NCBI GenBank assembly: GCA_038087875.1
Contig: CM075996.1
Span: 7,626,001-7,690,000, forward strand
Direction: 5' to 3'
Source: Malacoraja senta
Lineage: Eukaryota
DNA length: 64,000 bases
In this document: in pieces, positions 42,201 to 45,200 of the stretch
How the letters are laid out: the number at the start of each line of letters is the position of its first letter
How positions within the stretch are numbered: the first letter of the stretch is position 1
Program-made: the position numbers and the translations under genes
The notes under the pieces: generated by a model
What the model was told of the DNA's origin: nothing
The model's database searches: none
The model's input: the letters and a program-made list of their open reading frames with translations, nothing else

Positions 42201-45200
42201 GTTTAAAATGTCTATCAGACAGTAACAAGGGAGGGGGTGAAAACAAATCTTATTAAAATCATAAAAATTACATCTGAAGTATTTTCTCATTAAGTTAAAC
42301 TGACTCGGTTTGGCAGCTATAAAGCAGACAAATGCTATGTAGGAGAGGAAAAACTGATTTAAAACCTCCACTGCCTTGTGGCCATATCCAGTCATGGAAA
42401 AGGCTCCAGGAGTAAACCTCAAGAAAATCCAGTCGGAGCCCCTAAGGCAGTTCGTCATTGTCTACAACCTCGCTCTGGCAGCTCCTGCGACGGCCTTGGT
42501 GCCAAACTGTAACAGCCCTGCTGTCCCTTTGGATCGATCAGCGACGTGGAGGGGGGGACGTGCTGCATGGGCAACAGCCTGTCCTCCATACGACATCGCC
42601 CAGGCTTGCATCCGACCAGGATGCATCACCCATGGTCAGTCATGACCGAGAGGGGCCTACTATGCTATGTGTGGAAAATGGAAACAATTTAGAAACTAAA
42701 AAGAAATGTTTCCTTTTAAGTCAAAATGTACCATCCATGTTATTTTACCAGAAATCTTCAACTGGCCCTTTATATTAGGAAAACTTTCCTTGATGGAAAA
42801 AGGAAAATGGGTTTACCGGGAGCCACTTTCCATTTTCATCTACCCTCCATAACATCCCACCTACCCTTGAAAACCACAAGAAAAAGTACTAGTTCAGCAT
42901 CTCTTCTGGTCCTATGAAAATTTTACCTGCAGGTAACTTAAGCTTTAAGCTCTCAGAGAGCATTGTCCAGCTAAATAGCCACAGTACATTGAATTTCAAA
43001 GCTGTTTTAATTGTGTACATAGTAATATAGCAAATTTTAAAGGTGTTTAAAATTCAAAAATACATCCAGCACAGAAGGTGCCTGGAGCGGCAGGAACATT
43101 TGCAGTGCACTTCTCCTATAAAACTTCTGAGAGACTTAAATTATAATGACTTATTACAGGTAAAAAATAGTTTTAAAATGTTAGTATTAATTATATGAAT
43201 CAGAAACGTGGCATGCTCTTGGAAACCCAGTTCATGCATTGATCTCTAAATTAAGATGAAACATAACTGTGACACGTAAATTCTACATTCTTAATGATCA
43301 ATTGAAATCTTAATTTCATAAAAATAACTGTGGAAGACACTAAAGTGTGTTTAAGGTGATCTGTCAATGAAGGGAAAGCGTTTAATGCAGGAAAGTTGTA
43401 CCAAGGTCAGCCACGATCCTACTGAATGACAAAGGAGGAAGGAGGGGACAAATGCCTGTTCCTACAATTTTTCTGCTCTAGTTCTCAATCAAAGGTGCAA
43501 GTATAGCAGAAAGATAGAAAGCTCCATTTTTTTTTAAAACAGGCAGGGTCCAGAAATTTCAGAAGCAGAGGATGACTGTGCTTTTCTCAGACTGTTTGCA
43601 TGACCTGCCAGTCCATTCTAGACAAGCCACTTAATGCCATTCCTCCACCCTTCTTAGCATAGGAGTAGCACATGGCGTGATAATGTGGAAGAAAGAAGTA
43701 AAACTAAAGACCAAAGTGAAAAGCCAGGATATAAACTATAATCATAGCCCTTAATTGTCTTGGAGAAACTGCCAGGACAAGGGACACTGTGCAGTGTGCA
43801 TATCTTAATTTAGGTCCAACAAGAGTTATATTTATGAAATAATTTCATTATTGAATGCAGAAAAAAATTCCTCGTACTAGATTAGATCAATATTGAAAAT
43901 TAATTTAATTTCTACTTTTTCCACACAAGTGCATTTTGCTTACGTTGGTGGAACAGATTTCAGCACTGCAACACAAGATGAGGCATTGTTGAAATAGATG
44001 AGTTGCATTAACCTACAGCAGAAGGGAAAATAGAAAGAAAAAAAAGCAGGAATGGAGGAGAATGATGAACAGTCAGAGCAGGCAATTCTCAGAAGCAACC
44101 AGATCATAGTCTTCTCTCATGTCACCTGGTTCGATATGTAGAATAGGAAAGCATGCATAGAAATAGGCTAGCTGAAAGCCTTTTATCTCCGCAACAAACC
44201 GAGAGTGTTAAAAATAAGAATTCAACCCTCAAAGAAATTAATAACCAACGAGAACTGCAAGATACACATCTAGTCTCTTTACTAGATGCTTGCAAATCCA
44301 TCCTGAACCAATGCCAGAATTGTCAACAAAACATGCATCATATCCGCAAAGGTCTAAACCAAAACTCAAGTTAACTGGGCATGTAATATTTGGAAAAATG
44401 AGAATGAAAAGGCACCGTTTCAATATAATATAAATCAAGGTTAAATCGGTTCCGATCTCTAGCGAATTAGGAGCACTTGTGATGGATAACAGATTAACAA
44501 AAATCATACTGATCCAAATTCCTGGGTGTGAACATCTCAGATTACCTGCACTGAGCACAGTACATAGGTGTAACAATGAAGATGATGTGCCAGCTCCTCT
44601 AAGTTATTAAAGGTTTAAAGAGAATCTGTCCGTCACTGAATAATCTAAGCAACTTCTACAGATGATCTGAACTACCTTGACTGGTTGTACCACAGCATGT
44701 TGCTGCAATTCCAACACACAGGAATGCAAAAGGCTGAAAAGTGGTCGTGTCAGCCAAGTCCATCACGAGCACAACCCTTTCCACCATTGGAACAAGGTGA
44801 TGCCTCAAGAAGATGGCACCTATCATAGAGGAAGCCTGCCATCTAGGCTCTGCCCTGCTCTCGTTGCTACCAGTAGGTTCAAAAGCCTGAAGTCCCACAC
44901 AACAGGTTCTGGAACAGCTAATATACAACATCAGTTCTTGAATTGATCTGGACAACCCCAAACCTACCTCAAAAACAGACGACTGAACTACCTCTTGCAC
45001 TATCATAGACTTGTTTCTAATTGTGTTGTGCACTAGATTTTTTTTGCAGACTTTCTCTTTTCACTGTCTGGTAGAATTTTTGTATAATCTATATATAATT
45101 TATGCATAATTTGCTTTTGTGTGTTGGCTGAGTATGTGCGGCGATACTGCTGCAAGCAAGATTTCATTGTTCCTGTACCTCACCGTACTTCTGCATATGA

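What the first reader, a model, noticed from the sequence alone, without database searches (positions are those of the whole stretch)
44126..44190. Hidden loop-2 cassette homologous to myosin IIB B2, with a GG acceptor
Seen: in the 7.1-kb phase-1 intron between exons 15 and 16, a 63-nt phase 1-1 frame encodes [21 protein letters not shown]. Against the MYH10 B2 insert as I recall it (EIQNIQRASFYDSVSGLHEPP) it has the same length and site and 9/21 ungapped identities. The acceptor is ttgttgcGG|AG (position 44190 would be A). Alternative AGs give 61 nt and 46 nt (frameshifts) or 42 nt (in frame, [14 protein letters not shown]). UGCAUG occurs in the exon and at 44332-44337 and 43233-43238. Established: loop-2 inserts B2 and C2 are neural and strongly alter actin-activated ATPase regulation. 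Inference: the cassette predates the MYH9/MYH10 split and here is decaying, shortened, converted to an NMD switch, or mis-called at one base.
Basis: partly seen in the sequence, partly recalled or inferred. Interest (0 to 1): 0.85.

Follow-up and report, generated by a model that had tools for sequence, protein, structure and literature searches.

The report
Myosin IIA loop-2 exon, acceptor lost
The 63-base frame is real, but it is this animal's copy of the already published brain-specific "A2" exon of non-muscle myosin IIA (MYH9), and here its splice acceptor reads GG where two related species and more distant vertebrates read AG.

Summary
The gene lies on the minus strand and is MYH9-type. 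Its 7,097-nt phase-1 intron at the loop-2 site holds a 63-nt phase 1-1 frame (44188-44126). The frame encodes [21 protein letters not shown], has a GT donor, and has GG where an AG acceptor is expected.

It is not an unknown cassette. It is the orthologue of the published MYH9 A2 exon (NM IIA2; JBC 2023 and 2026), which has the same gene, intron, length and phase.
- It matches the mouse A2 peptide at 12 of 21 residues.
- It matches A2 cassettes that I found in two other MYH9-type loci at 12-13 of 21.
- It matches a tool-derived MYH10 B2 at only 7 of 21.
- It is the only such hit in the 64-kb window. Shuffled introns reach 9 of 21 at most.

The GG also stands in contigs of another run of the same organism label. 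Two related species read AG, as do both distant loci, so AG is ancestral and GG is derived.

RNA of two related species, tissues unknown, showed only skipping. Normal 63-nt inclusion is therefore probably lost in this species. A 54-nt in-frame exon or a 61-nt frameshifting exon remains possible.

A2, B2 and MYH14-type inserts share an N-terminal motif, so the cassette predates the paralogue split. The scan had not reported this cassette before.

The parts
46062..46176 (-). MYH9 exon 15 (VDYKANEW...FIADLWRD plus the first base of the split codon), donor G|gtacgt
   Evidence: the published A2 exon lies between exons 15 and 16
38965..46061 (-). 7,097-nt phase-1 intron at the loop-2 site, rich in high-copy repeats
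44191..44232 (-). Acceptor region of the cassette: pyrimidine-rich tract ttcttatttttaacactctcggtttgttgc with a possible branch point in tttttaac
   Evidence: The tract end gtttgttgc matches ctgtctgttgc of locus L005. The branch point is an inference.
44189..44190 (-). Acceptor dinucleotide, GG here. It is AG in related organisms C and D and in the MYH9-type loci L004 and L005.
   Evidence: plus-strand C>T at 44190 in X4 and X6, none in X2
44126..44188 (-). 63-nt phase 1-1 cassette, orthologue of the MYH9 A2 exon, encoding [21 protein letters not shown]
44120..44125 (-). Donor gtgaca with C at +5. The same GTGAC stands in L004 and L005, and it fits the weak A2 donor that the 2026 paper strengthened by a C>G change.
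   Evidence: the match to the mouse donor is my inference from the paper's text
44180..44188 (-). Downstream AGs that could replace the lost acceptor: 44188-44187 (61-nt exon, frameshift, stop inside exon 16) and 44181-44180 (54-nt exon, in frame)
   Evidence: use of either is not shown
38771..38964 (-). MYH9 exon 16 (second and third bases of the V codon, then DRIVGLDQ...NHEKK), matching human Myosin-9 residues 616-679
   Evidence: an mRNA contig of run X20 lies exactly on 38771-38965

Best explanation

In mammals, neurons include this 63-nt exon at a low level. Inclusion is helped by RbFox proteins, which compensate for a weak donor. The 21 inserted residues in loop 2 give NM IIA2, a myosin that binds actin and co-assembles into filaments but has almost no actin-activated ATPase or motility, so it brakes the filaments it joins.

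The exon is ancient. Reading frame, length, phase, core peptide (AYFY..FP-I/F-LH-I/L-E) and the GTGAC donor are all kept in this genome.

On the lineage of the sequenced species the acceptor AG mutated to GG. Canonical 63-nt inclusion is therefore most likely abolished, and the gene now makes only the non-inserted isoform or an altered product.

Shown here: identity and orthology of the exon, GG in this organism, AG in relatives and in distant loci. Taken from papers: the function of A2. Inferred: loss of inclusion in this species.
For: The gene is MYH9. Exon 16 and a C-terminal exon score best against human Myosin-9: 108.7 and 77.4 bits, against 95.6-98.8 and 61.9-68.4 for Myosin-10 and Myosin-11.

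The published A2 exon has 63 nt and 21 residues, lies between exons 15 and 16, and starts at the second base of a GAG codon. The mouse peptide is EMQSTQRAYFYRRFPILHLES. The window frame has the same site, length and phase and matches at 12 of 21 residues. It is the only such hit in 64 kb, and shuffles reach 9 of 21 at most.

Two other MYH9-type loci, whose exon 16 scores best against Myosin-9, carry the same cassette in the same intron with AG and GTGAC. L004 has EVQNCQRAYFYQRFPFLHLEP and L005 has EMQKVQRAYFYQHFPILHLEP. They match the window at 12 and 13 of 21 residues, and L005 matches at 47 of 63 nt. Similarity to B2 is 7 of 21 and to MYH14-type inserts 4-7 of 21.

Acceptor: X2 contigs are identical to the window and read GG. 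Contigs of related organisms C and D read AG. The paper states that ag and gt are conserved across 10 species.

RNA: the main MYH9 mRNA contig of X20 skips the cassette. Raw reads of X28 give about 15-25x on exon 16 but 0.37x on the cassette bin, the same as the flanking intron.
Against: No RNA of the sequenced species was available. The two informative RNA sets come from relatives and their tissues are unknown, so neither normal inclusion in the relatives nor its loss here is shown.

Run X2 may be the sample the assembly was made from, so the G at 44190 has no independent confirmation. The second sample of that organism (X3) did not cover the cassette, so polymorphism is untested.

The reading frame is still open and only two other bases differ from the relatives. 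The loss would therefore be recent, or the exon may still be used through a nearby AG.

The N-terminal half (EIKGFQL) departs from the conserved E-x-Q-x-x-Q-R in the relatives too, which hints at relaxed constraint in the whole group before the acceptor change.
Confidence: 0.8

Rival explanations
1. The exon is still used in this species through a downstream AG. One route is the AG at 44181-44180, which gives a 54-nt in-frame exon that drops EIK but keeps the conserved core (an 18-residue insert). The other is the AG at 44188-44187, which gives a 61-nt exon that shifts the frame, puts a stop inside exon 16 and would send the transcript to nonsense-mediated decay (a poison exon).
For: Both AGs lie within 9 nt of the old acceptor, behind the intact pyrimidine tract. 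The frame is open and the donor is intact. From general knowledge of 3' splice-site choice (CAG and UAG are preferred over AAG, and AAG over GAG), the first AG is a disfavoured GAG, so the AAG seven bases further on could compete.
Against: There is no RNA evidence for any inclusion. Both sites are weak acceptors, and the exon already depends on a weak donor. An exon with two weak sites is more likely to be skipped.
Confidence: 0.25
2. The G at 44190 is a base-call error, or one allele of a polymorphism, and the species has a normal AG acceptor and a normal A2 exon.
For: X2 may be the same sample as the assembly. The second sample X3 gave no coverage. Logan contigs drop minor variants. The close relatives read A.
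Against: An independent assembler gave the same G at a word depth of about 24, with no other difference over 2.6 kb. A single-base error at that depth is unlikely.
Confidence: 0.12
3. The cassette is a B2-type exon, a relic shared with or copied from MYH10, rather than the MYH9 A2 exon.
For: It shares the site, length, phase and N-terminal motif with B2.
Against: The gene is MYH9. Similarity to A2 is much higher, at 12-13 of 21 residues. The C-terminal FPILH-I/L-E is A2-specific, whereas B2 has SVS-G/S-L-H/D-EP.
Confidence: 0.02
4. The similarity is due to chance and the frame is ordinary intron.
For: The exon is short and no RNA supports it.
Against: It is the unique 12 of 21 hit in 128 kb of scanned strand. 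Shuffles reach 9 of 21 at most. The exact site, phase and donor match, and it is 47 of 63 nt identical to L005, whereas the intron flanks printed show no obvious likeness beyond the acceptor tract (flank identity was not measured).
Confidence: 0.01

Closest known systems
A2 exon of MYH9, giving NM IIA2 (Das et al., J Biol Chem 2023, PMC10480317; Mallick et al., J Biol Chem 2026, PMC13158602)
   Same: Same gene and same intron (exons 15-16, loop 2). Both are 63 nt, phase 1-1, and start with AG completing GAG. Both have the core AYFY..FPILH.E and a GTGAC-type weak donor.
   Different: The acceptor is GG instead of the conserved AG. The N-terminal half differs (EIKGFQL against EMQSTQR). The host is a distant vertebrate: its MYH9 exon 16 is about as far from human as that of the fish-like locus L004 (108.7 against 112.7 bits). 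No expression data exist for it.
B2 exon of MYH10, giving NM IIB2
   Same: A paralogous cassette at the same codon (residue 622 of MYH10, equivalent to 615 of MYH9). It has 21 residues, the same phase, and shares E-I-Q-x-I-Q-R-A-x-F-Y. According to the paper's citation of Kim et al., it also abolishes actin-activated ATPase.
   Different: It is in a different gene. Its C-terminal half is DSVS-G/S-L-H/D-EP rather than ..FPILH-I/L-EP. It matches the window at only 7 of 21 residues.
C2 exon of MYH14 and the MYH14-type inserts of reptiles, amphibians, lungfish and teleosts
   Same: Same loop-2 site. The N-terminus is E/D-I-Q-N/T-I/L-Q/P-K/R-V-Y-F-F/Y-D.
   Different: Usually 23 residues, followed by M instead of V. 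The mammalian exon is given as 99 nt (33 residues). The published effect is different: activity becomes independent of light-chain phosphorylation. It matches the window at 4-7 of 21 residues.

Membership tests
MYH9 A2 cassette exon (NM IIA2) | Lies in the MYH9 orthologue | tested here: met
   Exons score best against human Myosin-9
MYH9 A2 cassette exon (NM IIA2) | Sits in the intron between exons 15 and 16, inserting before V615 of loop 2 | tested here: met
   Exon 16 aligns from residue 616 and the split codon is V615
MYH9 A2 cassette exon (NM IIA2) | 63 nt, phase 1-1, first two bases AG completing a GAG (Glu) codon | tested here: met
MYH9 A2 cassette exon (NM IIA2) | Peptide of the A2 type (E-x-Q-x-x-Q-R-AYFY-x-x-FP-I/F-LH-L/I-E-P/S) | tested here: met
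   12 of 21 to mouse, 13 of 21 to L005, 12 of 21 to L004. The core and C-terminus are kept; Q3 and R7 are not
MYH9 A2 cassette exon (NM IIA2) | Canonical AG acceptor, reported conserved across 10 species | tested here: not met
   GG in the window and in X2. AG in related organisms C and D and in L004 and L005
MYH9 A2 cassette exon (NM IIA2) | Weak GT donor | tested here: met
   CAG|GTGACA. The same GTGAC stands in L004 and L005. The paper's C>G change that strengthens the donor fits C at +5. No MaxEnt score was computed here
MYH9 A2 cassette exon (NM IIA2) | Included in brain mRNA, RbFox-dependent | tested here: inconclusive
   No inclusion in X28 reads or X20 contigs of related species, tissues unknown. 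X25 gave no coverage of the gene. No RNA of this species was available
MYH9 A2 cassette exon (NM IIA2) | The insert abolishes actin-activated ATPase and motility | not testable with these tools
   Known for mouse and human only
MYH10 B2 cassette exon | Lies in MYH10 | tested here: not met
   The gene is MYH9-type
MYH10 B2 cassette exon | B2-type peptide (EIQ-N/I-IQRASFYDSVS..) | tested here: not met
   7 of 21 to P0313, against 12-13 of 21 to A2
Poison exon (NMD switch) | Inclusion introduces a premature stop upstream of later exon junctions | tested here: inconclusive
   The 61-nt version would place a stop inside exon 16. Its use is not shown.

The most novel reading that the evidence does not exclude
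One species has naturally lost or remodelled the inhibitory NM IIA2 isoform through a single A>G change at the acceptor, while sister species keep AG. The exon may now act as a 61-nt poison exon, or as a shortened 54-nt insert that keeps the conserved AYFY..FPILH core. Either way it would be a natural experiment on what the brain-specific 'dead-motor' isoform of myosin IIA is needed for.
Probability: 0.25. Interest if true: 0.45.

Novelty: new member of a known kind. Interest (0 to 1): 0.3.

Why it matters
The A2 exon was described only in 2023. In the text I could read, its conservation is stated for mammals and for ten species that the text does not name.

This work shows the same exon, with the same phase, core peptide and weak GTGAC donor, in three further settings:
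- a vertebrate whose MYH9 is about as far from human as that of a fish-like locus;
- one fish-like MYH9 locus (L004);
- one tetrapod-like MYH9 locus (L005).

It also shows that A2, B2 and MYH14-type inserts share one N-terminal motif. The loop-2 'brake' cassette is therefore an old, shared feature of vertebrate non-muscle myosin II, and it has been lost repeatedly in some paralogues.

The GG acceptor is a clean lineage-specific lesion that could be used to ask whether NM IIA2 is dispensable. This extends a published finding modestly. It is not a discovery of a new kind.

Tried and rejected
- **RNA from organism D.** Run X25 gave zero depth on exon 15, so it said nothing.
- **Second read-laying run.** The stretch contained very high-copy repeats that filled the tables. 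X3 did not cover the cassette, and X23's letter at 44190 was not listed.
- **No RNA run of the window's own organism.** None holds exon 16 fully. X1 holds only about 6% of the words of the intron stretch and none of the sampled exon 16 words, so it is probably repeat transcripts.
- **Representative search.** It returned mostly exon-plus-intron fragments, not full-length MYH9. With no full-length MYH9 id, I could not search for annotated A2-bearing isoforms.
- **The three protein searches.** They reached MYH14-type and MYH10-type proteins only.
- **Short or unrecorded loci.** Most fragment look-ups gave contigs too short to contain the intron (L001-L003, L008, L009, L011, L012). The locus of the B2-bearing protein P0313 is not on record.
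- **B2 peptide in papers.** A search for it found nothing, and PMC1446101 is not held.
- **Splice-site scores.** MaxEntScan could not be run offline, so splice-site strengths are described in words only.
- **Rejected explanations.** Chance similarity, a repeat or transposon origin (the region is single copy), and conserved RbFox UGCAUG sites.

Full report
**Observation**

The gene runs on the minus strand. Exon translations match non-muscle myosin II.

Two exons were scored against solved structures. Exon 16 gives 108.7 bits to human Myosin-9, against 98.8 to Myosin-11 and 95.6 to Myosin-10. A C-terminal exon gives 77.4 bits to Myosin-9, against 68.4 and 61.9. The gene is therefore MYH9-type.

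Exon 15 is 46176-46062 and ends LWRD plus one G, with donor gtacgt. Exon 16 starts at 38964 behind cttag and aligns from residue 616 of human MYH9. The 7,097-nt phase-1 intron therefore splits codon V615 in loop 2.

Inside the intron the minus strand reads ...ttcttatttttaacactctcggtttgttgcGG|AGATAAAAGG...GAACCAG|gtgaca. The 63 nt at 44188-44126 keep the frame between exons 15 and 16 and encode [21 protein letters not shown].

One point was missed: besides the 61-, 46- and 42-nt options there is a 54-nt in-frame option, using the AG at 44181-44180.

**What it is**

A literature search found that this cassette is already described in mammals. Das et al. 2023 (PMC10480317) report the A2 exon of MYH9:
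- it has 63 nt and encodes 21 residues in loop 2;
- it starts at the second base of a GAG codon;
- it is expressed in brain, with mRNA also seen in skeletal muscle;
- the mouse peptide is EMQSTQRAYFYRRFPILHLES.

Mallick et al. 2026 (PMC13158602) place A2 between exons 15 and 16. They state that its ag and gt are conserved in an alignment of ten species. They show that a weak donor causes skipping and that RbFox proteins promote inclusion.

The window peptide matches mouse A2 at 12 of 21 positions, with the block AYFY..FPILH.E intact. A scan of every position on both strands of the 64-kb window in this phase found no other hit above 8 of 21. In 200 shuffled copies of the intron the maximum was 6-9.

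**Independent copies of the cassette**

Fragments from the representative search led to genomic contigs.

| Locus | Source | Cassette position | Peptide | Acceptor / donor |
|---|---|---|---|---|
| L004 | NCBI assembly GCA_977065575.1; 1.5-kb intron | 8829-8891 | EVQNCQRAYFYQRFPFLHLEP | ctctctcAG / GTGACA |
| L005 | Logan contig of ERR12041334 | 999-1061 | EMQKVQRAYFYQHFPILHLEP | ctgtctgttgcAG / GTGACT |

Both are MYH9-type: their exon 16 scores best against Myosin-9. Both carry the 63-nt cassette in the same intron.

The window and L005 cassettes share 47 of 63 nt. Their acceptor tracts also resemble each other (gtttgttgc against ctgtctgttgc). I saw no other obvious likeness in the 60-nt intron flanks printed, but I did not measure flank identity.

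**Comparison with the other loop-2 inserts**

Database proteins gave real inserts of the other paralogues:
- MYH10 B2 from a toadfish isoform (P0313, at residue 622): EIQIIQRASFYDSVSSLDEPA.
- MYH14-type from lizards: EIQNIQKVYFFDSYAVAPQGPAE.
- MYH14-type from lungfish: EIQNIQRVYFYDTYAVLEQPSGE.
- MYH14-type from teleosts: DIQTLPRVYFFDSYATLQANGSD.

| Window cassette compared with | Identical residues (of 21) |
|---|---|
| A2 sequences (mouse, L004, L005) | 12-13 |
| B2 from P0313 | 7 |
| MYH14-type inserts | 4-7 |

The cassette is the A2 orthologue and a paralogue of B2.

All three groups share E-I-Q-x-I-Q-R/K-A/V-Y/S-F-Y/F at the same codon, and A2 and B2 share the same phase.

**The acceptor**

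Contigs of run X2 (organism B) are identical to the window over 2.6 kb and read GG. Contigs of X4 (organism C) and X6 (organism D) are about 4-6% diverged in this intron. At 44190 they read T on the plus strand, which is A on the gene strand, giving cAG|AG.

L004 and L005 have AG, and so do the species in the paper's alignment. AG is therefore ancestral, and G is a derived change on the lineage of the sequenced species.

The relatives differ at two other cassette positions (L7P and E20K) and at intron position +4.

X2 may be the sample behind the assembly, and the second sample X3 did not cover the site. A fixed difference is therefore likely but not proven.

**Expression**

No RNA run of this organism holds the gene. 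Three RNA sets from relatives were laid on the window:
- X25 did not cover the gene.
- The main MYH9 mRNA contig of X20 lies on exon 16 only, and no X20 contig covers the cassette.
- X28 raw reads give roughly 15-25x on exon 16 and 0.37x on the cassette bin, equal to the neighbouring intron.

Skipping is therefore the major form, as in mammals. Tissues are unknown, so brain-specific inclusion is untested.

**Mechanism**

By homology, inclusion of the exon puts 21 residues into loop 2. This yields a myosin IIA that binds actin and co-assembles into filaments but has very low actin-activated ATPase and no motility. It slows filaments that contain it. This function comes from the papers and is inferred for this animal.

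Here the pyrimidine tract, the possible branch point and the weak GTGAC donor are intact, but the AG is gone. The likely outcomes, in my order of preference, are:
1. Constitutive skipping, so that NM IIA2 is lost.
2. Use of AAG at 44181-44180, giving an 18-residue insert that keeps the conserved core.
3. Use of GAG at 44188-44187, giving a 61-nt exon with a stop inside exon 16 and decay of the transcript.

The UGCAUG motifs are not good evidence for regulation. There are four in the intron against about 1.7 expected. The upstream copy is altered in both relatives. L005 has none within 500 nt of its cassette, and L004 has one, about 200 nt downstream.

**Other copies and losses**

A second fish MYH9-type paralogue has an intron of only about 300-420 nt at this site and no cassette (L006, L007). 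The flounder MYH10 has a 392-nt intron and no B2 (L010), while the toadfish MYH10 keeps B2. The cassette has therefore been lost several times.

**Verdict**

The feature is a new orthologue of a published exon, with a lineage-specific acceptor lesion. Earlier notes of this scan hold nothing on this cassette, only a loop-1 note on the same window.

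Noticed in passing
window 59382-59405 (minus strand): A candidate loop-1 microexon noted earlier by the scan (s1-175038). The text is tttgCAGCAG|TCTACGGTGTTAGCATAC|gtgagt, lying between the exon ending ..[10 protein letters not shown] and the exon starting [16 protein letters not shown] confirmed only that the sequence and its position are as described. 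The 2023 paper found no loop-1 splicing of MYH9 in mouse.
   Followed up: partly
window 39273-40036, 40419-40991, 41947-42137, 42329-42710, 44496-45278: Very high-copy repeats inside the intron. Summed contig depth is 10^3 to 10^6, against about 5-25 for unique sequence. They are also abundant in RNA runs of related species. A shared loose-end consensus contains CTGAAGAAGGGTCTCGACCCG. From memory this resembles an abundant SINE of cartilaginous fishes, which I did not test.
   Followed up: no
L006:750-1173 and L007:489-759; L010:28722-29114: A second fish MYH9-type paralogue and the flounder MYH10 have very short introns (about 270-420 nt) at the loop-2 site and no cassette. A toadfish MYH10 isoform (P0313) keeps B2. 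This points to repeated independent loss of the loop-2 cassette.
   Followed up: partly
proteins P0254, P0270-P0317 (loop-2 region): MYH14-type inserts come in several lengths at one site. There are 23 residues followed by M instead of V, 20-21 residues followed by V, 24 residues in one teleost protein (P0312), and a 30-residue Anolis form with GRVFTKT in front. This suggests alternative donors and acceptors on one ancestral exon.
   Followed up: no
window 43857-44060: A stretch 70-270 nt downstream of the cassette shows slightly raised DNA depth. It also has a few RNA reads or contigs in X25 and X20, unlike its surroundings. It is probably a low-copy repeat or a small transcribed element.
   Followed up: no
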